Assembly: GCF_000142905.1 (NCBI RefSeq)
Contig: NW_013657623.1
Location: 25,928-89,927 of the forward strand
Length of the DNA stretch: 64,000 nt
Direction of reading: 5' to 3'
DNA from: Thecamonas trahens ATCC 50062
Lineage: Eukaryota; Protista; Apusomonadida
The notes beneath the pieces are model-generated. The model saw only the letters and a program-made list of their open reading frames with translations. It was not told the origin of the DNA and did not search any database. Below, in pieces: positions 20,480 through 63,411 of this stretch; within the stretch, counting starts at the first letter, position 1; the number at the start of each line of letters is the position of its first letter. A program made the translations under genes and the position numbers.

Positions 20480-21070
20480 GGTGGTGGTGTGTCAGTCGAA
20501 ATCGGCGGAGGAACTCTCTCTGTGTTTCTCCTCACTGCGGACGGTGAAGTGTTTGCATATGGTTGCATTAATCGTAGTCATCATGCCAATTGGGGGCTCC
20601 CGCGTGCGCCTTTGACCACCTTTTTTGATGGGCAAACGGAACCATTATTCCTCCTTTTAGATGTTGATGCGGCAGAGGAAGGGGGGGAGGGTGGGGGGTG
20701 GGGGGGGAGGGAGGTATCCAATTGGCGGGATAGAAGGGAGTGAAGGGGATAGAGGGGGGTGGACGGGGTGGATGGGTGGTGGTAGGGGTGGTGGTCGGTG
20801 TAGGACGGTGGAAGGGGAGGGTGGCTGGCGCGTGGGAGGATGTACCCCGGTGGTGTCGGCGGCGGAATGGGTGGTGTACGTTTGCGCGTGAGCGCGCGCT
20901 TGGCTTGCAAGGCAGTGCAAAGGGCGGGGGGGGGGGGGGGTCAGAAAAAAATTTACGCGAGAGGGTGTGCGGGTGGGGGAGGAGGGGGTGGCTGGGCTGG
21001 CTGGGCTGGCTGGTAACGGATGCAGTTGGTGGCGGACGAACAGGCAGTGTCGGCAGCGGCAGACTTGACA

Positions 21071-22444
21071 ATGCAGAGCGTTGGCAGGCGAGGTGGAGGC
21101 GGAGAACGAGGAGGGCGACGAGGTGTAGCAAGTGCGGCGAGTACGACGAGTACGGCAAGTGCAGGGGCAGTGCCTGGCGCTGGTCCGCGGCCGTCGGGTG
21201 CGCTCGAGTACCTCGAGCATCATGCGCTGCGGGCGGTGTTTGAGGCTATGACCATAGCGGTCATTGTCAATCGTCCCGACGATCCGCTCAGTTATCTCGC
21301 TGCCCATCTCCAGGCGCTGCCGTCGCCAATGAACCACGCTGAGCGGACACGCCTCGCTACCTCTCCGGAGTACTACATGGCCGCGCCCGAGCCTGCGTCT
21401 GAGCCGGTGTCAGCGCCTAGGCCGGGCCGCGAGCCGCCAGCTGCCCCGATGACCGAGGATGAGCCAGAGGCTGTGGTCGAGGCCGGTGGGGGTGAGACCA
21501 AGGCTCAAGCTGGAACGTTGGCCGATGATGCAGCTGAGGCGACAGTGCTGGCGGTGGATGTGTGGGCGGGAAAGCGTGCCGGTGGCGTTCGGTATATGGA
21601 GGACGACGCGCTGGCGCTAGCGTCTGTCTCGCCGCGATCGTATCCGTTTGACGGTCTGTTGGGGGTCTTTGACGGCCATTCGGGCGACAAGAAGGCCGGG
21701 CGGGCGGCGGCCGGGCTGGCCAAGGTGCTGGCCGCCGGCGAGTTTGTGCGGGCAGAACAGGCGGCGCTGCGGTCGCGCGATGTGGAACTCGATGTGGACA
21801 AGGTCTTTGTCAACATGTTCGACGCCATGCAGCGGATGATGGTGAAGCGGCTCAAGCGCAATGTTGAGTACGCTGGGACGACGGCAACAGTGGCAGTCAT
21901 CCGTGATGACGGCGATCTGCTGGCGGCTAACGTGGGCGACTCGTCGGGCCTGCTCTGCACCTACTGGCTTGACGCTGGTGAGGAGCAGCTGGCGGCGGTG
22001 GCGACACCGCTGACAACAGACCATGTGGCCACAGACGAGGTCGAGCGCGAGCGAGTGGTTGCTGCTGGTGGCTTTATCACCGACGATGCCAAGTTTGGCC
22101 GCAGGGTCAACGGCCTGCAGGTGACGCGGTCGTTGGGCGACGTCGGCTCGCCGGGCACGGTGGCCACGCCGTCGACAACACGGATTCCGCTCGGCAAGGG
22201 CAATGTACTCGGAGTGGACGTCCCGCCGAACGCCGTCTCGCTCGTCCAGTACGTGGTCCTGGCCTCGGACGGGGTCTGGGGTGGCATCTCGGTCCAGGCG
22301 CTCCTCGATGAGATCATTCAGCCCGAGATGCGCGCCGCGGCGGCCGGGGAGGCGATCCTGAATGCCGCCGAGGAGAGGGCAGATCCCAACGCGCTGGATA
22401 ACTTGTCGGTGGCAGTCTATTGCCGAGTGACCAAGCCTGTGTAA
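21071..22444 (+). CDS. PP2C/PPM phosphatase with N-terminal RIIa/Dpy-30-like docking domain
   Basis: YLEHHALRAVFEAM..AVIVNRPDDPLSYLAAHL; MEDD, FDGH, ANVGDS, LASDGVW, DNLS. Start could be 21020. Confidence 0.85.
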   Translation: MQSVGRRGGGGERGGRRGVASAASTTSTASAGAVPGAGPRPSGALEYLEHHALRAVFEAMTIAVIVNRPDDPLSYLAAHLQALPSPMNHAERTRLATSPEYYMAAPEPASEPVSAPRPGREPPAAPMTEDEPEAVVEAGGGETKAQAGTLADDAAEATVLAVDVWAGKRAGGVRYMEDDALALASVSPRSYPFDGLLGVFDGHSGDKKAGRAAAGLAKVLAAGEFVRAEQAALRSRDVELDVDKVFVNMFDAMQRMMVKRLKRNVEYAGTTATVAVIRDDGDLLAANVGDSSGLLCTYWLDAGEEQLAAVATPLTTDHVATDEVERERVVAAGGFITDDAKFGRRVNGLQVTRSLGDVGSPGTVATPSTTRIPLGKGNVLGVDVPPNAVSLVQYVVLASDGVWGGISVQALLDEIIQPEMRAAAAGEAILNAAEERADPNALDNLSVAVYCRVTKPV

Positions 22445-22461
22445 AGTGAACCGAGTGTGGG

Positions 22462-25400
22462 TTACGGTGAGGGCGAGGCCGCTGGCGGGTCGAGATGGAC
22501 CATGCCACCAGCGACAAGCTCGCGGACTCGTTCGACGTCCTCGACACGAGCCTTGAGCACGCCAAGCTCGTCCTCGGCCAGGTCGATGTCCATGGCAGCA
22601 ACCTGTCCCGCGATAGCCTTTTCGCGATCCTGGAGCTCGCGTAGGCGGGCGAAAAGCTCTTCGTCGTCCTCTTCGTCGAGGTCTTCGCCGTCGGCGTCGA
22701 TCCAGATCCCGTTCATCGTGCACCACGCGTCAGTGGCCGCGTCGACAAATTCGGTGGACCACGGGATGGCGAGACCCAGCTGCGAGGGGCGAAGGAAGAG
22801 GCCAGTGGCGGGCGGGGCGTCAAAGTAGCGGACGCCGTCGAGCGAGCCGTCGTTCTTGCCGGTGCCAACGGCGTCAACCTCGATGCCGACCCAGGTGCCG
22901 GCGGCAAACTGGGTGGCGCCGACGTAGCGAACCACGCCCATAGTGTGGGTGTGGAGGCGCCAGACCCGATCACCTCGGCGGAAGGCATGTGGCGACTTGA
23001 TGATGTGCAGGAGGTCTGGGCGGACAAAGACGCCGTGGCCCGGGGCGCAGGCAAAGAACTGGATGCCCATGCAAAACCCGTTGGTCCCGACCTCGCCGTA
23101 GTGGCGCGGGCCGGCGATGCCAACAAACTCACCAGCACCCGGGAACGGGAGCGAGCCGACGTACTTGACAGCCGCGAGGGTGTCTTCAAACTTGACTGGA
23201 AGATCGGCGAGGGCCTTGGTGCGGGCAGCGAGGACCTTGGCGGCCTTGGCAGCACGGCGGTCGCGACGGGCTCGGGCTCGGGCCTCCTGCTCCTCCAGCA
23301 GCATGCGCTCGCGGCGAAGATGCATCTGGAACGCCTGCCGCTCGGCGCGGAGTTTGCGTGCTTCGGCAAGAGCCTTGCGCTTGAGCTGGGCCGACTCTGC
23401 AGCGCGACGGTGTCGCTCCTGCTCGCGGACAGCAAGCTTTTCCTCGATCTCGCGCTGTTGCGCGGCCATGGCGGCGCGGGCGGCGGCAATCTGCTCCTGA
23501 CGCTTGGCATCCTTAAGGGCTTGGATGGCAGCGAGGCGCTGCTCTTCGGCGAGGGCAATGGCGCGGGCACGCTGGGCGCGAGCCTGGTCGAGAGCGTGAG
23601 TGACGTTCTCAAGCGCCGACGACCATGCGGCAAGAGATGCGGCGGCGAGGGCGGCCTTGGCTTCGTCGTGGACGTCAGCGGAAAAGGTGTCAATCGCAGC
23701 GGTAGCAGCAGCGCGAGCAGGGCGAAGCGCGGCCTTGGCCTTCCGAAGCATGGTCTTTTCGGCGTCGTGAAGGGCCGAGGCGACAAAGTCGTCGAGGAGA
23801 GCAAGCTCCGAGGCTGTAGCTGAGGCGTAGCGGGCGGCGTCGGCGGCGAGTGGATCAAAGACCCGGGCGCGAAAGGCAGCCTCCTTGCGAGCGGCAGCAG
23901 CGGCCTCCTCGGCCGCGAGCTGGGCCTCGGCCTCATCGGGCGAGGCTCCGGCGGCGATGAGCGCGCGCTTGCGCTCGTTTCGGCGCGCAAGGGCGGCAGC
24001 GGCAGCGCGGAGATCAGGAAGGCGGGCAAGGGCTCGATACGTGTCAGCGAGGGCGCGGAGATGGGCAGCGGCGACCCGCTTGCGCTCGGCGAGAGCGCGC
24101 AGGGCCGCAGTGCGGACAGTATTGAGCGCCTGCCACAACTTGTCCTTGAGGAGAATCTTAGAGTGGCCGATGGCGTACATCTCAGATGGGTCCAACAGGC
24201 GGGTGCGCGGACGAGCCTGAGCTGGGTCGTCGGAGACGTCGTCTGCCTCGGGAGGCGGGAGCGGCGCAATGCGATCAAGGACATCGAGATCAAGGGCCGC
24301 AGCAATGAGATGATTGAGGAGAAGCGAGAGAGTCTCATCAATGGATGAGGGTGAGGGGCTGGCGGCAGCGGCCTTCAGCTGCGGCGGGCGTCGGTGAGAG
24401 CATCGGCAAAGTGTGCGATAAAGTCGGACTTGCGGCGCTCAACAGGAAAGCCGGCAAGGCGCATCTCGATGATGGCGTACATGCCGGCGGAGACAAGCTG
24501 GTCAAGGACCTTCCAATCTTCAAAGAACCCGCCCTTGCGCATGACGCAGTTGGGCTTGACGCAACGAACAAAAAGGGCCTGGGTCGAGGCGAGGGCAGAC
24601 GAGAGCGAGCGAAGCGAGGCAGAGAACTTGGAGGCGACGGTGCGGCGAGAGGCGCGGGCGCGGGAAGACTGTGCAGCGGCGTCGCTGTCCCGGGTGGAAG
24701 CATGAGCGGCGAGGCCAGCGACGAGCGGCGAGGTGGAGGTGGCGAGGAGATCAGAGCAGTCTTGGGAGAGGGCATCCATGTTCTTTTGGACTGCGCCGAT
24801 GGAGGTGTACCAGACAAGGCCGGCGTAGTGGTGGATGAAAAAGTCTGTCTCGTGCTTGTGGTGGCGCATGTCGGGCTTGAGATGCCAGCCGAAGAAGTCA
24901 GCCTTGTCGCGCTTCCAGTCTGCGGGTGCCAGCGGGCCTGTCTTACGCTTGCCATACTTGCGAACAATGTCTGCGAGCCACTTTGCGTCTGCGGCACGGG
25001 GATTTGCCTGCATGTCGCGGGAGACGGAGGCCATTTTGGTGACAGAGTCGAGGAGCGAGAGCAGCGAGGCCTTGGGGCCCATGATAAGGTCGATGCACCC
25101 GGCGTTGTCGCGATAGACAACCGAGTCGACGGTCACGCCCTCTACGGCGTACTTTGCGGCTTGAGCGGGGATGAGCGACTCGAAAAAGTAGTGCTGGAGA
25201 ACCTCGTTGGTGAGGTTGATGCAGAGCTGCTCAAACTTGTTGGCAGTCTCGACAGAGCCGTCGGGTAGCGATTCCTGAAACGACTCAAAGCCAAAGATGT
25301 CGAGGACACCGATCCATGTGGCAGCGCCGGCGCCGGCAAGCACGCCGTTGATGTGCTTCTCGACAAGGCCCTCGAAGAAGAGGCCGTAGACGGCCTTGGC

Positions 25401-26725
25401 CAGTGCATCGGTGGTGTCAGAGGCCTGGACTGGCGTCAGGTTCTTGGCGACGTTGTCGCCGATGCGGACAGTGGTGAGCGCAAGCTCGAGCGCGTCTGGG
25501 CCGCCAGGAATGCCGAGCAGTTCTGCAGCCTTGACGAGCGGGGCCGGATCGACGACAGTCACGCGGGCAGTGTCGTCCTCGGGGTTGGGGCAAAGGTGAT
25601 TTGGCCGAGGTGAAGGACGGCTGCGATGACACCGAGCATGGCGTCGACAAAGTTGTCGCCAAAGCCGAGGGTGGCGAGGTGGGCAAGGAAGCTCTCGTAG
25701 CGACCAGCATCGTCAAGGGGTTCGCCAGCCTTGTCAAAGCCGTAAGAGGCTGCATTAGCGCCATCGGGCCCGATGAGATAGCGGTAGTCCGTGACAGTGG
25801 TGAGGCCAAGGGCAGCAAGGCGGGGCGGCGGGAGGGCGGCAAAGATCATGTAGAAGATGTGGTAGTTGCGTTCGCCAGGCTCCTGGGCAACGATGCGCGA
25901 CTTTTCGAGGAGGTACTGCTCAATGGCGGCGCCAACAATGGCGCCCGAGGTGGAGAATTGGATCTGGACAAACTTGCCAAACCGCGACGAGTTGTCATTG
26001 CGCGAGGTCTTGGCATTGCCAAAAGCTTCCAACACCTCTGAAGTGGCGAGGATCTTATCGTTGATGGAGGGAGATGAAAGTGATGAAGAAGAGGCACTGG
26101 CAGTGGCGACGGCAGCGAGGTAGTGGAGGACATGCTTGGTCGACTCGGACTTGCCTGCGCCTGACTCGCCTGAGACGACGATGGACTGGTTGGTGGCCGA
26201 GTCGAGCATGCGGGCGTAGGCCTCTGCACCGACAGCAAAGATGTGTGGGCTGAGCGGCGGGTCATGGGCGAGGCGCGAGCCCTTGTACATCTCGACATGC
26301 TGCGGCGAAATGAGGCCCTTGTCCTCGAGCGGGTTGATCACCACGAGCACGTCGCCGACATAAGTGTAGTACTCCATAGGCGAGGCCTTGTATCGCAGGC
26401 GGAGGTTGTGCATGAGCTCACCAACAGCAAGATCAGCCAAGTCGACCATGTTCTCCCGACCTTGAACATTCGATTCATCCATATGTTGCACATACGCCGC
26501 ATCGCCTGGGCGAATGACGACCTTTTGCGGAAGCACGGGCATCGCCGGCGCGCATGTCGGGCAAAGGTCACCCCATTGCGGAGCAAGTGTGAGCGAGCTC
26601 TCGTCAGAAGCAAGGACAATACCAGCTACTTTGGGTGGTGAAGGCGTAGGTGTAGGTGTGGGCGAGGGGTATGGGTAGTTGCACAGCCAGACTGCCGTCT
26701 TGGGAGGGTAGTCAGGGAAGGCCAT
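22462..26725 (-). CDS. Myosin with coiled-coil/helical tail and two C-terminal CAP-Gly domains (~1421 aa after repairing 2 frameshifts)
   Basis: GESGAGKS, LEAFGNAKT.RNDNSSRFGK, YLLEKSR, ERNYHIFY, LDIFGFE, FVRCVKPN, converter IGHSKILLK, IQ-like helix, CAP-Gly GKNDG; single-C deletions near 25587-25590 and 24386-24388. Confidence 0.85.
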
Positions 26726-26980: not shown

Positions 26981-27797
26981 NNNNNNNNNNNNNNNNNNNN
27001 NNNNNNNNNNNNNNNNNNNNNNNNNNNNNNNNNNNNNNNNNNNNNNNNNNNNNNNNNNNNNNNNNNNNNNNNNNNNNNNNNNNNNNNNNNNNNNNNNNNN
27101 NNNNNNNNNNNNNNNNNNNNNNNNNNNNNNNNNNNNNNNNNNNNNNNNNNNNNNNNNNNNNNNNNNNNNNNNNNNNNNNNNNNNNNNNNNNNNNNNNNNN
27201 NNNNNNNNNNNNNNNNNNNNNNNNNNNNNNNNNNNNNNNNNNNNNNNNNNNNNNNNNNNNNNNNNNNNNNNNNNNNNNNNNNNNNNNNNNNNNNNNNNNN
27301 NNNNNNNNNNNNNNNNNNNNNNNNNNNNNNNNNNNNNNNNNNNNNNNNNNNNNNNNNNNNNNNNNNNNNNNNNNNNNNNNNNNNNNNNNNNNNNNNNNNN
27401 NNNNNNNNNNNNNNNNNNNNNNNNNNNNNNNNNNNNNNNNNNNNNNNNNNNNNNNNNNNNNNNNNNNNNNNNNNNNNNNNNNNNNNNNNNNNNNNNNNNN
27501 NNNNNNNNNNNNNNNNNNNNNNNNNNNNNNNNNNNNNNNNNNNNNNNNNNNNNNNNNNNNNNNNNNNNNNNNNNNNNNNNNNNNNNNNNNNNNNNNNNNN
27601 NNNNNNNNNNNNNNNNNNNNNNNNNNNNNNNNNNNNNNNNNNNNNNNNNNNNNNNNNNNNNNNNNNNNNNNNNNNNNNNNNNNNNNNNNNNNNNNNNNNN
27701 NNNNNNNNNNNNNNNNNNNNNNNNNNNNNNNNNNNNNNNNNNNNNNNNNNNNNNNNNNNNNNNNNNNNNNNNNNNNNNNNNNNNNNNNNNNNNNNNN
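26981..27797. other. Assembly gap (N run)
   Basis: Ns flanked by poly-G. Confidence 0.99.
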
Positions 27798-54214: not shown

Positions 54215-54509
54215 NNNNNNNNNNNNNNNNNNNNNNNNNNNNNNNNNNNNNNNNNNNNNNNNNNNNNNNNNNNNNNNNNNNNNNNNNNNNNNNNNNNNNN
54301 NNNNNNNNNNNNNNNNNNNNNNNNNNNNNNNNNNNNNNNNNNNNNNNNNNNNNNNNNNNNNNNNNNNNNNNNNNNNNNNNNNNNNNNNNNNNNNNNNNNN
54401 NNNNNNNNNNNNNNNNNNNNNNNNNNNNNNNNNNNNNNNNNNNNNNNNNNNNNNNNNNNNNNNNNNNNNNNNNNNNNNNNNNNNNNNNNNNNNNNNNNNN
54501 NNNNNNNNN
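54215..54509. other. Assembly gap (N run)
   Basis: Ns flanked by poly-C. Confidence 0.99.
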
Positions 54510-60678: not shown

Positions 60679-63411
60679 ATGAGTGCAATGCCCTCCACGC
60701 CTGCCGGCCGTGTCTGCTTCGCCTGTAACACGCCTGTCCACGAAGCCGTCACCGTCACCGGCAATGGCACCGTCTGGCACCCACACTGCTTTGCATGCTC
60801 ATCGTGTGGAACACATATCCAAGGTAATCCCCCCCTCCCTCCCCCCTCCTCCCCTCCCCCTCCCTCCCTCCTTCTTTTCCCCCCTTACCCACTCCCCCCC
60901 CGTTTAAAANNNNNNNNNNNNNNNNNNNNNNNNNNNNNNNNNNNNNNNNNNNNNNNNNNNNNNNNNNNNNNNNNNNNNNNNNNNNNNNNNNNNNNNNNNN
61001 NNNNNNNNNNAGCTCTCACCCCTCCCGCCATGCTTAGGCAAGTACGTCCTCGGTCCGTCGATATGCTCTGGCTCGGCAAGTGGTGATGGCGCTGTTGGTC
61101 TTGGTGGCTCTGATCCTGCTGGTCCTGCTGGTGGTGGTGGCCGCACTGCTACTGGTGGTAATGGTACAACTCGGGCACCGATCTGTCTTGATTGTGCTCG
61201 GCTCAAGTGTGACAAGTGTGGAGAGAGTGTAGAGGCTGCTGAAGAGCACATGGAAATCGGTCAACTGGTCTTCCATCTAGACTGCTTTACCTGTACTACT
61301 TGTCATGCTCCCATTGCTGATGCTGATACCTTCTCAGGTCAGCCATCTGCTCCTCATTGCCTCTCATGTACATCGCTCGCGGCTCCCGTGGTGGTCACCC
61401 TCCCAAGAACCTGCTCCACTTGTCAACAGCTCATCACAGACCCATCTTTCTTCTCCATCCACAACGATGAATGGTTCTATCACTCGGACTGCATGGCCTG
61501 CGTCACGTGCGGTGTTGATGTCTCGCAAGCTTACTTTGAGCGCGACTCGCTCCTCTACTGCCGTGAACACGCGCGTTCCGCCTTCAAGGTCCGCGGCGCC
61601 GACGAGTCGCCCGCCTCCTCGGCCTCGTCCAACTCATCCGGACGTGTGAGTGGTCCGCGCGGCTCGCTCCACCGCGCCTCTGCCTCTGTTCCTGCTTCTG
61701 ATCTCGCGCCTGCGACCTCCTCGCCGCCTCCTGACGACGAGCGCCCGCCCGATGGTGCCGCCGTCATGGCGCCGGAGCTCGTCGTCGACCAGCGGACATC
61801 CCGGGTAGAGTCGGCCGTCATAGAGCCCGGCAAGGTTGTCGCCGCTCTCCCGCTGGCCACCGAGATCGACCAGGCCGACGCGCTCGCCTTCCTCTCCCAG
61901 CTCATGGACGAGGAAGATCTGTCGTACTACGCAAACTTGTCCAAAAAGGACATGAAGGCGAGAAAGAAGCGCCAAAAGGCCGAGGCCAAGCGCCGAAAGA
62001 AGCTCGCCAAGGAGACCGGCGCATCCCATCCCGACGCCGCCGACACGACCTCTTCGTCGCCGTCTGCCCATCCGTCCGACGCACCCGACCTCAAGTTTGA
62101 TGATGGCGGTGCTGTTGTCGGCGGCTCGCCCGCTCGCCTCGTCGAGCGTCTCACCTACGAGCGCCACCCGACCCCGACCTACATGCAGACCTTCATGCTC
62201 ACGTTTCGGTCGTTCGCCACCCCGCGCGAGCTGGTCCAGCTCCTGGCCCGCCGCTTCAACACGCCCACCCCCGCCACACTGAGTGACGAGGCCAAGCTCG
62301 AGCACTACCGCCAGACCCTCGTCCCCATCCGCCTTCGTGTCCTCAACGCCTTCAAGTTTTGGATCTCCACGCACTGGTACGACTTTGAGGCTGACGACGG
62401 CCTCTGCGACGTCGTCATCGCCTTTGCCCGCAACACGCTTGCAGCCTGCATGCCCGGCCCCGCCGCCGCTGTCGTCTCAAAGATCGAGCGCATGCGCGCG
62501 AGCGGCCGCGAGTCGGCAGTCGCTCAGCTTGCCCGCAAGCAACCCAAGCCGGTTCTCCCCAAGGTTCTCAAGGCCAACCCGGACCTGGACATCGCCGCCG
62601 CACTCGCGGCAGGCCCCGATGCCGCGCTTGCTCTCCGCGACATTCCGCCGCTTGAGCTTGCGCGTCAGCTGACCCTCATCGAAGCCGAGCTGTTTGCGCC
62701 GTTGAGCCGCGCGAGTGCGTCTCCAAGCAGTGGTCCCGTGTCGACGCCGCCGGCAACTCGGCTGCCCCAAACATCTCCGCCATCGCAGCCCGGTTCAACA
62801 CTGTCTCCCGTTGGGTCGCTTCGGCCATCGTCTCCGAGCCCGAGCTCAAGAAGCGCAAGGCGCTCATGGCCTACTTTCTCAAGGTCGCTGGCAAGTGCGC
62901 CAAGCTCAACAACTTCAACTCGACCATGGCCATCCTCGCTGGCTTCCACTCCTCGGCTGTCTACCGCCTCAAGATGTCATGGGACGGCCTGCCCAAGTCC
63001 GCCGCAAAGGCTTACGCCAAGCTCGAGGCGCTCACCAACTCGGCCTCCAACTACAAGCAACTCCGCGCTGCCCTCCGCAAGTCCAACCCACCCGCCGTCC
63101 CCTACCTCGGCATGTTCCTCACCGACTTGACATTTGTTGAGGATGGCCTCCCGGCATACATCGACGCCGCAGACGCCGCTCCTTCGCCTCGCCTCATCAA
63201 CTTTACCAAGCTCCGCAAGGTCGCCACAGTCATTCGCGGCATCCAGCTCTTCCAGCACGAGCCGTACTCATTTGTCGAAGTCCCCGCCCTCGCCCGCTTC
63301 CTCCGACACGACCTCCACCCGCTCACAGACGACGACATGTATCGCCTCTCCCTCGACATCGAGCCGCGCGGGGCCTACAAGTCCAAGTCCAAGTCCAAGT
63401 CCAAGTCATAG
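60679..63411 (+). CDS. LIM x3, REM and CDC25 RasGEF; exon 1 60679-60823, intron 60824-61037 (contains N gap), frameshift near 62697
   Basis: Three CxxC-HxxC-CxxC-CxxC/H LIM units; FMLTFRSF, IRLRVLN..K.W...HWYDF; ELARQLTL, LNNFNS, PAVPYLGMFLTDLTF, INFTK. Confidence 0.88.

What the first reader, a model, noticed from the sequence alone, without database searches (positions are those of the whole stretch)
22462..26725. Myosin carrying tandem CAP-Gly domains: candidate actin motor that grips microtubule ends
Seen: three ORFs in different frames become one ~1421-aa protein after adding one C at each of two C-runs. The third piece contains the end of the converter (IGHSKILLK) and an IQ-like helix, so it belongs to the motor. 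The tail has an E/R/K/A-rich helix, a degenerate CAP-Gly (~23010-23185) and a canonical GKNDG CAP-Gly (~22780-22945). Known: CAP-Gly binds EEY/F tails of alpha-tubulin and EB proteins and occurs in CLIP-170, p150Glued and KIF13B, whereas myosins usually reach microtubules via MyTH4-FERM or adaptors. Inference: a direct actin-microtubule linker that automated annotation would miss because of the frameshifts.
Basis: partly seen in the sequence, partly recalled or inferred. Interest (0 to 1): 0.85.

Follow-up and report, generated by a model that had tools for sequence, protein, structure and literature searches.

The report
Thecamonas myosin with CAP-Gly tail
This is one real gene of the gliding protist Thecamonas trahens that joins an actin motor (myosin) to two CAP-Gly domains, which normally bind tubulin tails; its two apparent frameshifts are most likely errors of the draft assembly, and the gene is already in public databases as an unstudied "orphan" myosin.

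Summary
Three minus-strand ORFs (26725-25592, 25589-24387, 24384-22465) abut with no room for introns. Read through with X at two broken codons, they give 1421 aa: an intact myosin motor, about 320 aa of helices, a degenerate CAP-Gly, then a canonical GKNDG CAP-Gly.

An intact 1414-aa marine-metagenome ortholog (P0153; 68/67/55% identity over the three pieces) reads straight through both breaks.

The organism is Thecamonas trahens ATCC 50062. The same kind of break hits at least 7 dynein heavy-chain loci, the single EB1 hit in the genome and other myosins, so assembly indel errors are the likeliest cause. No reads could be checked.

The claim that annotation would miss the gene is wrong. Public model AMSG_12322 (1293 aa) already fuses both domains, though it bridges the breaks with two false introns.

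The architecture is a family: six T. trahens paralogs plus four marine-metagenome proteins form one motor clade. One paralog was in the 2014 myosin classification, which lists a nameless "Thecamonas orphan" group. This scan had already found paralogs on other DNA. A dinoflagellate has a convergent myosin-CAP-Gly fusion.

Binding to the alpha-tubulin EEY tail is plausible. Plus-end tracking is unsupported: EB1 ends in EA and the tail has no SxIP motif.

The parts
22462..26725 (-). Whole gene: myosin with tandem CAP-Gly tail, from start Met at 26725 to stop TAA at 22462-22464. It reads as 1421 aa with X at the two breaks. Public model: AMSG_12322.
25592..26725 (-). Piece 1 (378 aa): N-terminal region and first half of the motor. 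P-loop GESGAGKS at 26147-26170, switch I NDNSSRFGK at 25973-25999, VLHLGQITF at 25592-25618.
25587..25591 (-). Break 1: broken codon at 25590-25591 at the C-run 25587-25590. The frame changes with no spare DNA. The resulting false stop is TGA at 25559-25561.
24387..25589 (-). Piece 2 (401 aa): second half of the motor. Switch II DIFGFE at 25284-25301, SH1 helix FVRCVKPN at 24549-24572, RLAGFPVERR at 24432-24461.
24385..24388 (-). Break 2: broken codon at 24385-24386 at the C-run 24386-24388. The resulting false stop is TGA at 24375-24377.
22465..24384 (-). Piece 3 (640 aa): end of the converter (IGHSKILLK, 24145-24171), degenerate IQ-like stretch (24016-24063), helical region and CAP-Gly tail.
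23209..24159 (-). Helical region of about 317 aa, rich in Ala, Arg, Leu and Glu. The model has five long helices, the last one R/E/A-rich (AERQAFQMHLRRERMLLEEQEARARARRDRR...).
22996..23199 (-). CAP-Gly domain 1, degenerate: GTNG in place of GKNDG and F in place of the conserved W. The predicted fold is beta-rich. This domain is degenerate in all family members.
22762..22968 (-). CAP-Gly domain 2, canonical: GKNDG at 22846-22860. It matches CLIP-170 and p150Glued CAP-Gly domains by sequence and by predicted fold.
22657..22764 (-). Conserved helix after CAP-Gly 2 (PWSTEFV..., with a family-invariant W), followed by an acidic stretch (DEEDDEE at 22657-22677).
25578..25618 (-). False 41-nt GT..AG 'intron' of the public model. 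It deletes the conserved motor segment VLHLGQITFAPNPE in order to bridge break 1.
24379..24443 (-). False 65-nt GT..AG 'intron' of the public model. It deletes the conserved segment VERRKSDFIAHFADALTDA.. in order to bridge break 2.

Best explanation
The locus is one intronless gene of Thecamonas trahens for a roughly 1421-aa unconventional myosin. It has a catalytically intact actin motor, a short and poorly IQ-like neck, about 320 aa of long helices, a degenerate CAP-Gly and a canonical CAP-Gly, then a conserved helix and an acidic end. The two frame breaks are most likely single-base deletion errors of the draft assembly, not mutations. It belongs to a small clade of CAP-Gly-tailed myosins with six paralogs in T. 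trahens and orthologs in marine metagenomes. Inferred mechanism: the motor walks on or anchors to actin while CAP-Gly 2 binds the C-terminal EEY of tyrosinated alpha-tubulin. This would link or move microtubules, or tubulin-bearing cargo, relative to the actin cortex of this gliding flagellate. The gene structure, domains, intact motifs, family and presence of the ligand motif are shown here. Tubulin binding, dimerisation and cellular role are inferred.
For: One gene: the frames abut and an intact ortholog (P0153, 1414 aa, Tara Oceans contig) reads through both breaks with conserved residues on each side. Paralogs on C25 and C46 hold motor plus two CAP-Gly domains in single ORFs of 1594 and 1654 aa. 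Assembly error: breaks with no room for an intron occur in dynein heavy-chain loci L008-L014, about 9-10 in 92 kb. The only EB1 hit in the genome is broken inside ERDFY|GKLRDIE, with 2 nt where a codon is needed. The same holds for myosins on C44, C30, C9 (twice) and C34. Three N gaps lie in the window, one 256 nt upstream of the start. No decay: there are no other stops in 4.26 kb. P-loop, switch I and switch II are intact. dN/dS against the ortholog is 0.16, 0.19 and 0.12 for the three pieces. The window's end branch is 0.20 against 0.28 for its ortholog. Tail: CAP-Gly 2 matches CLIP-170 at E 1e-16 with GKNDG and the flanking F, W and RYF conserved. The AF2 tail model has pLDDT 80.9, and Foldseek gives TM 0.87-0.96 and rmsd 0.7-1.3 A to CLIP-170 and p150Glued CAP-Gly domains. 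T. trahens alpha-tubulin ends ...DYVEEY.
Against: A recent pseudogene cannot be excluded. The six paralogs carry 6 breaks in about 26 kb, which is somewhat more than the dynein rate predicts (about 2.4 expected). In most paralogs the GKNDG motif is degenerate (GNTDG, GTNSG, GHNNG, GKNNG), so EEY binding may not be the family's common function. No binding test was obtained: complex prediction was unreachable. The neck has no Pfam IQ motif.
Confidence: 0.68

Rival explanations
1. The frameshifts are real: this paralog is a recently inactivated pseudogene in a six-member family with spare copies.
For: There are two independent frame breaks in 4.3 kb. Four of six paralogs are broken, at a density about 2.5 times that seen in dynein genes. 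Redundancy would make loss tolerable.
Against: The same kind of break hits dynein heavy chains and the genome's only EB1 hit. There are no other stops, all motor motifs are intact, and the branch is not lengthened relative to the ortholog. This paralog has the most canonical CAP-Gly of the family and a conserved ortholog.
Confidence: 0.2
2. The gene is intact, but the CAP-Gly tail does not bind tubulin. It would recognise another C-terminal acidic-aromatic tail or a different partner, as CYLD CAP-Gly domains do, and so act as a cargo adaptor rather than a microtubule link.
For: GKNDG is degenerate in most paralogs and CAP-Gly 1 is degenerate in all. T. trahens has at least 73 CAP-Gly matches in many architectures, which suggests broad use of the domain. 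The Foldseek hits also include CYLD CAP-Gly bound to ubiquitin.
Against: In this paralog the GKNDG motif and the flanking residues conserved with CLIP-170 are all present. The canonical ligand motif EEY ends the cell's alpha-tubulin.
Confidence: 0.25
3. The breaks are read through in vivo by programmed ribosomal frameshifting or RNA editing, which would be widespread in this organism.
For: Frame breaks are frequent in conserved genes of the assembly.
Against: The shift sites lie about 10 codons (break 1) and 3 codons (break 2) upstream of the false stops, not at them. They share no common motif; the contexts are GGG, CCC, TT and CCCC runs. Intact paralogs and orthologs need no shift at the same positions.
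Confidence: 0.03

Closest known systems
'Thecamonas orphan' myosins of Sebe-Pedros et al. 2014 (PMC3942036), including the T. trahens paralogs AMSG_09426 and the proteins NCBI names 'myosin VIIA' and 'class VII unconventional myosin'
   Same: Same organism. The window gene falls in one motor clade with AMSG_09426 (SH-aLRT 99), and AMSG_09426 is in that paper's sequence file. [quoted passage not shown]
   Different: The paper's text, legends and held supplements never mention CAP-Gly. AMSG_12322 itself was not found in the held part of the file, which was cut. I could not show from text that the 'orphan' group is exactly this clade. The group has no class name and no functional study.
CLIP-170 and p150Glued CAP-Gly domains
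   Same: CAP-Gly 2 shares GKNDG and the flanking conserved residues at E 1e-16. The predicted fold superposes at 0.7-1.3 A.
   Different: Here the domain sits on a myosin, not on a +TIP or dynactin arm. The first domain is degenerate. EB1 of this organism lacks the EEY/F tail that CLIP-170 and p150Glued use at plus ends.
KIF13B (kinesin-3 with a C-terminal CAP-Gly)
   Same: It is a cytoskeletal motor carrying a CAP-Gly in its tail. The KIF13B CAP-Gly (2cow) matches at E 5e-16.
   Different: KIF13B's CAP-Gly binds the motor's own track. Here the motor's track is actin, and the CAP-Gly would bind the other filament system.
MyTH4-FERM myosins (VII, X, XV), the known microtubule-touching myosins
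   Same: The motor clade sits in an unresolved polytomy that includes MyTH4-FERM myosins. NCBI names two paralogs after myosin VII.
   Different: There is no MyTH4 or FERM domain. The clade is not nested in the sampled class VII.
Crypthecodinium cohnii myosin P0286 (MMETSP0324, 1743 aa)
   Same: Myosin_head plus CAP_GLY in one protein.
   Different: It has a single CAP-Gly (GRNDG) at the extreme C-terminus. Its motor scores lowest against the apusomonad clade, so this is an independent fusion.

Membership tests
Myosin superfamily | Myosin_head domain above Pfam's cut-off (33.3 bits) | tested here: met
   294.7 and 192.9 bits for pieces 1 and 2, covering profile positions 2-276 and 291-633.
Myosin superfamily | Intact ATPase motifs: P-loop, switch I, switch II | tested here: met
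   GESGAGKS, NDNSSRFGK and DIFGFE are present, identical or near-identical to the intact ortholog.
Myosin superfamily | Light-chain-binding IQ motif in the neck | tested here: inconclusive
   No Pfam IQ hit. Paralogs have the IQ-like FQALHRMWLARRRLP, while the window has the degenerate HLRALADTYRALARLP.
Myosin superfamily | Actin-activated ATPase and motility | not testable with these tools
   This needs a biochemical assay.
CAP-Gly domain family | CAP_GLY Pfam hit above the cut-off (26.5 bits) | tested here: met
   111.5 bits over two stretches. In the genome scan the two domains score 82.2 and 39.1 bits.
CAP-Gly domain family | GKNDG motif | tested here: met
   Met in domain 2 (22846-22860). 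Not met in domain 1, which has GTNG.
CAP-Gly domain family | CAP-Gly fold | tested here: met
   AF2 model plus Foldseek: TM(target) 0.87-0.96 to CLIP-170 and p150Glued. The top hits are at 40-50% identity and therefore match domain 2. The fold of domain 1 rests on the beta-rich model only.
CAP-Gly domain family | Binding of EEY/F C-termini | not testable with these tools
   The ligand motif is present in alpha-tubulin (...DYVEEY). The complex prediction was unreachable.
Microtubule plus-end trackers (+TIPs) | A route to EB1: an EB1 EEY/F tail for the CAP-Gly, or an SxIP motif in the protein | tested here: not met
   EB1 ends ...DEAVEA. There is no SxIP motif in the tail.
Apusomonad CAP-Gly myosin clade | Motor-domain monophyly with the other CAP-Gly myosins | tested here: met
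   10 rows form one clade with SH-aLRT 99. The window pairs with P0153 at 100. HMMER bit scores drop from at least 490 inside the family to at most 314 outside it.
Apusomonad CAP-Gly myosin clade | Tail architecture: helices, degenerate CAP-Gly, second CAP-Gly, conserved PW helix, acidic end | tested here: met
   Alignment A1 of 8 tails.
Class VII / MyTH4-FERM myosins | MyTH4 and FERM domains in the tail | tested here: not met
   Pfam finds only Myosin_head and CAP_GLY in the window pieces and in all family members scanned.
Pseudogene | Frame disruptions confirmed in the organism's DNA, with relaxed constraint | tested here: inconclusive
   Disruptions exist in the assembly, but the same kind of break hits dynein and EB1 genes. 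There is no sign of relaxed constraint. Reads were unavailable.

The most novel reading that the evidence does not exclude
The apusomonad CAP-Gly myosins are a distinct, still unnamed myosin class whose tail binds tyrosinated alpha-tubulin directly. They would then be actin motors that pull on or position microtubules. That solution to actin-microtubule coupling is not described for any myosin, and a dinoflagellate reached it convergently.
Probability: 0.35. Interest if true: 0.65.

Novelty: new variant of a known kind. Interest (0 to 1): 0.45.

Why it matters
Motors that touch both filament systems are rare and mechanistically informative. Known examples are myosin X through its MyTH4 domain and plant kinesins with calponin-homology domains. 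A myosin carrying the standard tubulin-tail reader would be a compact, directly testable actin-microtubule coupler. It sits in the sister lineage of opisthokonts, in a cell that glides and makes pseudopodia. Practically, the work shows that the public T. trahens assembly carries frequent single-base indels in conserved genes. It also shows that gene models such as AMSG_12322 hide these indels behind false introns, which matters to anyone using this proteome for comparative work.

Tried and rejected
- Independent short assemblies across the breaks: a search with piece 2 alone found no protein of 220-700 aa at E <= 1e-40.
- Complex prediction of the CAP-Gly tandem with the last 45 residues of alpha-tubulin: the machine was busy seven times. 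There is no verdict.
- Introns as the cause of the frame changes: rejected. The HSPs abut, and the 'introns' of the public model encode residues conserved in intronless orthologs.
- Programmed frameshifting: rejected. The shift sites lie upstream of the false stops and share no common motif.
- Literature: no text mention of CAP-Gly in Sebe-Pedros 2014, Kollmar and Muhlhausen 2017 or Odronitz and Kollmar 2007. Foth 2006 is not held. Full-text searches found no paper describing a myosin with CAP-Gly. Searches for the sequencing technology of the assembly gave nothing usable.
- ESM Atlas: no cluster of 50 or more members combines Myosin_head and CAP_GLY.
- The joined read-through (X at both breaks) was used only in local scripts for alignment, motif search and the tree. 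It was never sent to a database search.
Full report
**What is in the sequence.** Between 22462 and 26845 the minus strand holds three long ORFs in three frames. Pfam places Myosin_head positions 2-276 in the first (E 1.7e-87) and positions 291-633 in the second (E 1.1e-56). It places two CAP_GLY stretches in the third (E 1.8e-32).

The frames change without spare DNA. At the first junction the text runs ...VLHLGQITF | (GC+?) | PNPEDDTARVTVVD. At the second it runs ...FADALTDA | (CC+?) | PQLKAAAAS. The broken codons are 25590-25591, at the C-run 25587-25590, and 24385-24386, at the C-run 24386-24388.

**Organism and public model.** The tail is 100% identical to residues 717-1293 of a 1293-aa protein. 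That protein is AMSG_12322 / XP_013753739.1 / KNC54383.1 of Thecamonas trahens ATCC 50062, annotated 'uncharacterized protein'. Pfam finds Myosin_head and CAP_GLY in it. So the fusion is already in public databases.

The model is damaged, however. It starts at an internal Met (window 26449). It also bridges the two breaks with GT..AG 'introns' of 41 nt (25618-25578) and 65 nt (24443-24379). These delete VLHLGQITFAPNPE and VERRKSDFIAHFADALTDA... Both segments are conserved motor sequence in intronless relatives, so the introns are artefacts.

**An intact ortholog reads through both breaks.** A motor-based search found four metagenome proteins with Myosin_head plus CAP_GLY: P0151, P0152, P0153 and P0155. 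P0151 to P0153 lie on Tara Oceans or marine-metagenome contigs. The contigs of P0155 carry only assembly accessions, one of which also holds P0152.

P0153 (1414 aa) is the ortholog of the window gene. It shows 68, 67 and 55% identity over the three pieces. Its residues 9-381, 384-785 and 798-1411 map to 26704-25592, 25589-24387 and 24342-22489. It reads LHLGQIQFRLPPSEGEDGRVSVVD and LLDADPEVKAVVAS across the two sites. Its N-terminus fixes the start at the Met at 26725.

I therefore asked whether the assembly shows the same defect in genes that the organism is unlikely to do without.

- Dynein heavy chains: of 11 loci examined, 3 are single frames over the roughly 9-kb stretch fetched. Loci L008 to L014 change frame with abutting or overlapping alignments to an intact paralog, about 9-10 events in about 92 kb.
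- EB1: the only EB1 hit in the genome is broken inside its most conserved motif. ERDFY ends at nt 1498 and GKLRDIE starts at nt 1501 of L024 in another frame, leaving 2 nt where a codon is needed.
- Other myosins show the same defect: C44, C30 (once), C9 (twice, against an ortholog 85% identical in the motor) and C34.
- The window itself has three N gaps, one 256 nt upstream of the start.

The gene shows no decay. There are no further stops. P-loop, switch I and switch II are intact. dN/dS against the ortholog's DNA is 0.16, 0.19 and 0.12 for the three pieces, with dS near saturation. The terminal branch is 0.20, no longer than the ortholog's 0.28.

I conclude that assembly error is the likeliest cause, at about 0.7. 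A recent pseudogene remains possible, at about 0.2. The six paralogs carry somewhat more breaks (6 in about 26 kb) than the dynein rate predicts.

**The family.** Own-genome scans give 73 CAP_GLY matches and six loci where a Myosin_head is followed on the same strand by two CAP_GLY domains: C57 (this one), C9, C34, C30, C25 and C46. On C25 and C46 both domains lie in single ORFs of 1594 and 1654 aa.

I built a quick IQ-TREE of 48 motor domains over 683 columns. It holds the six paralogs, the four metagenome proteins, 18 other T. trahens myosins and 20 outside myosins. The ten CAP-Gly myosins fall in one clade (SH-aLRT 99). Each metagenome protein pairs with one paralog: window+P0153, C9+P0152, C25+P0151 and C30+P0155. 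At least four of the paralog lineages are therefore older than the split from those marine relatives.

The clade sits in a polytomy with MyTH4-FERM, PH, V/XI and II groups. It has no MyTH4 or FERM domain, so the NCBI names 'myosin VIIA' and 'class VII' for the paralogs are best-hit labels only.

Sebe-Pedros et al. 2014 list a nameless 'Thecamonas orphan' group near classes VII, X and XV, and they include AMSG_09426, the C46 paralog. Neither that paper nor Kollmar and Muhlhausen 2017 nor Odronitz and Kollmar 2007 mentions CAP-Gly in any held text. Whether their orphan group is exactly this clade could not be shown from text. This scan had already reported paralogs on other contigs, and one follow-up reached the same family-level reading.

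**Outside the clade.** A tail-based architecture search found Crypthecodinium cohnii P0286 (1743 aa). It has Myosin_head at residues 1-714 and one CAP-Gly (GRNDG) at residues 1657-1723. Its motor scores lowest against the apusomonad clade. Myosin plus CAP-Gly therefore arose at least twice.

**The tail.** An AlphaFold2 model built on an eight-sequence family alignment has mean pLDDT 80.9. It gives five long helices (residues 7-323 of the tail), two beta-rich domains (327-394 and 404-472), a short helix, a disordered acidic stretch and a further helix.

Foldseek matches CLIP-170 and p150Glued CAP-Gly structures at TM(target) 0.87-0.96 and rmsd 0.7-1.3 A. At 40-50% identity these hits match domain 2. 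By sequence, domain 2 matches CLIP-170 CAP-Gly (2cp7) at E 1e-16 and keeps GKNDG and the conserved TQFA, W and RYF positions. The roles of these residues in EEY/F binding come from my knowledge of the CAP-Gly literature and were not tested here.

Domain 1 has GTNG and F in place of W, and it is degenerate in every family member. Within the family, GKNDG is canonical only in the window gene, its ortholog and C34. The others read GKNNG, GHNNG, GNTDG or GTNSG.

**Possible ligands.** T. trahens alpha-tubulin ends ...EDLDYVEEY, which is the classical CAP-Gly ligand. EB1 ends ...DEAVEA. The tail has no SxIP motif.

The best-supported mechanism is therefore an actin motor whose tail binds tyrosinated alpha-tubulin tails. 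'Gripping microtubule ends' has no support. The acidic end might fold back on the CAP-Gly groove, as in CLIP-170 autoinhibition, but that is speculation. The complex prediction could not be run.

**Verdict.** It is wrong about annotation missing the gene, too specific about plus ends, and too high on novelty. The thing is real, public and unstudied.

Noticed in passing
L024 (G000:C3:575744-578833), nt 1484-1521: The only EB1 hit in the genome is frame-broken inside its most conserved motif, ERDFY|(F)GKLRDIE: 2 nt stand where a codon is needed. Its C-terminus reads ...DEAVEA, with no EEY/F.
   Followed up: yes
L007-L014 (dynein heavy-chain loci on C6, C17, C42, C68, C16, C14, C47): L008-L014 change frame with no room for an intron, about one event per 10 kb (L007 is ambiguous). 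Public gene models of this assembly are likely to hide such breaks behind false introns or truncations.
   Followed up: partly
G000 whole genome: There are at least 73 CAP_GLY matches in a 28.7-Mb genome, in many open frames of 150-2500 aa. This looks like a large expansion of the domain.
   Followed up: no
window 22442-22464: The convergent neighbour, a Dpy-30/RIIa-PP2C gene (21020-22444, + strand), ends 17 nt from the myosin's stop codon. The two 3' UTRs must overlap.
   Followed up: no
window 26981-27797: An 817-nt N gap lies 256 nt upstream of the myosin start. The promoter and 5' UTR region is unknown and local assembly quality is low. Two further N gaps lie at 54215-54509 and 60910-61010.
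   Followed up: no
P0286 (Crypthecodinium cohnii, MMETSP0324): A dinoflagellate myosin has a single C-terminal CAP-Gly (GRNDG) after about 940 aa of tail. Its motor is unrelated to the apusomonad clade, so the fusion is convergent.
   Followed up: partly
P0276 (EukProt transcriptome, 1051 aa) and P0006 (JGI, 1098 aa): The precomputed Pfam annotations list Tubulin + Tubulin_C + CAP_GLY in one protein (P0276) and PARP + CAP_GLY in another (P0006). Both are odd CAP-Gly fusions seen among the tail hits.
   Followed up: no
L002 and L047 (G000:C34:132972-136624 and 140190-142376): The C34 CAP-Gly myosin lies about 3.5 kb from a second, divergent myosin gene on the same strand. In the tree that gene has a long branch within another T. 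trahens group.
   Followed up: no
L022 (G000:C38, beta-tubulin): Beta-tubulin ends ...DFGDYEPEY, an acidic tail that also ends in Tyr. It might be a second CAP-Gly ligand.
   Followed up: no
L001 (G000:C9:206000-213500): The C9 paralog is split in the public annotation. Its tail is a separate 706-aa model named 'dynactin' (P0002), because two frame breaks separate it from its motor.
   Followed up: partly
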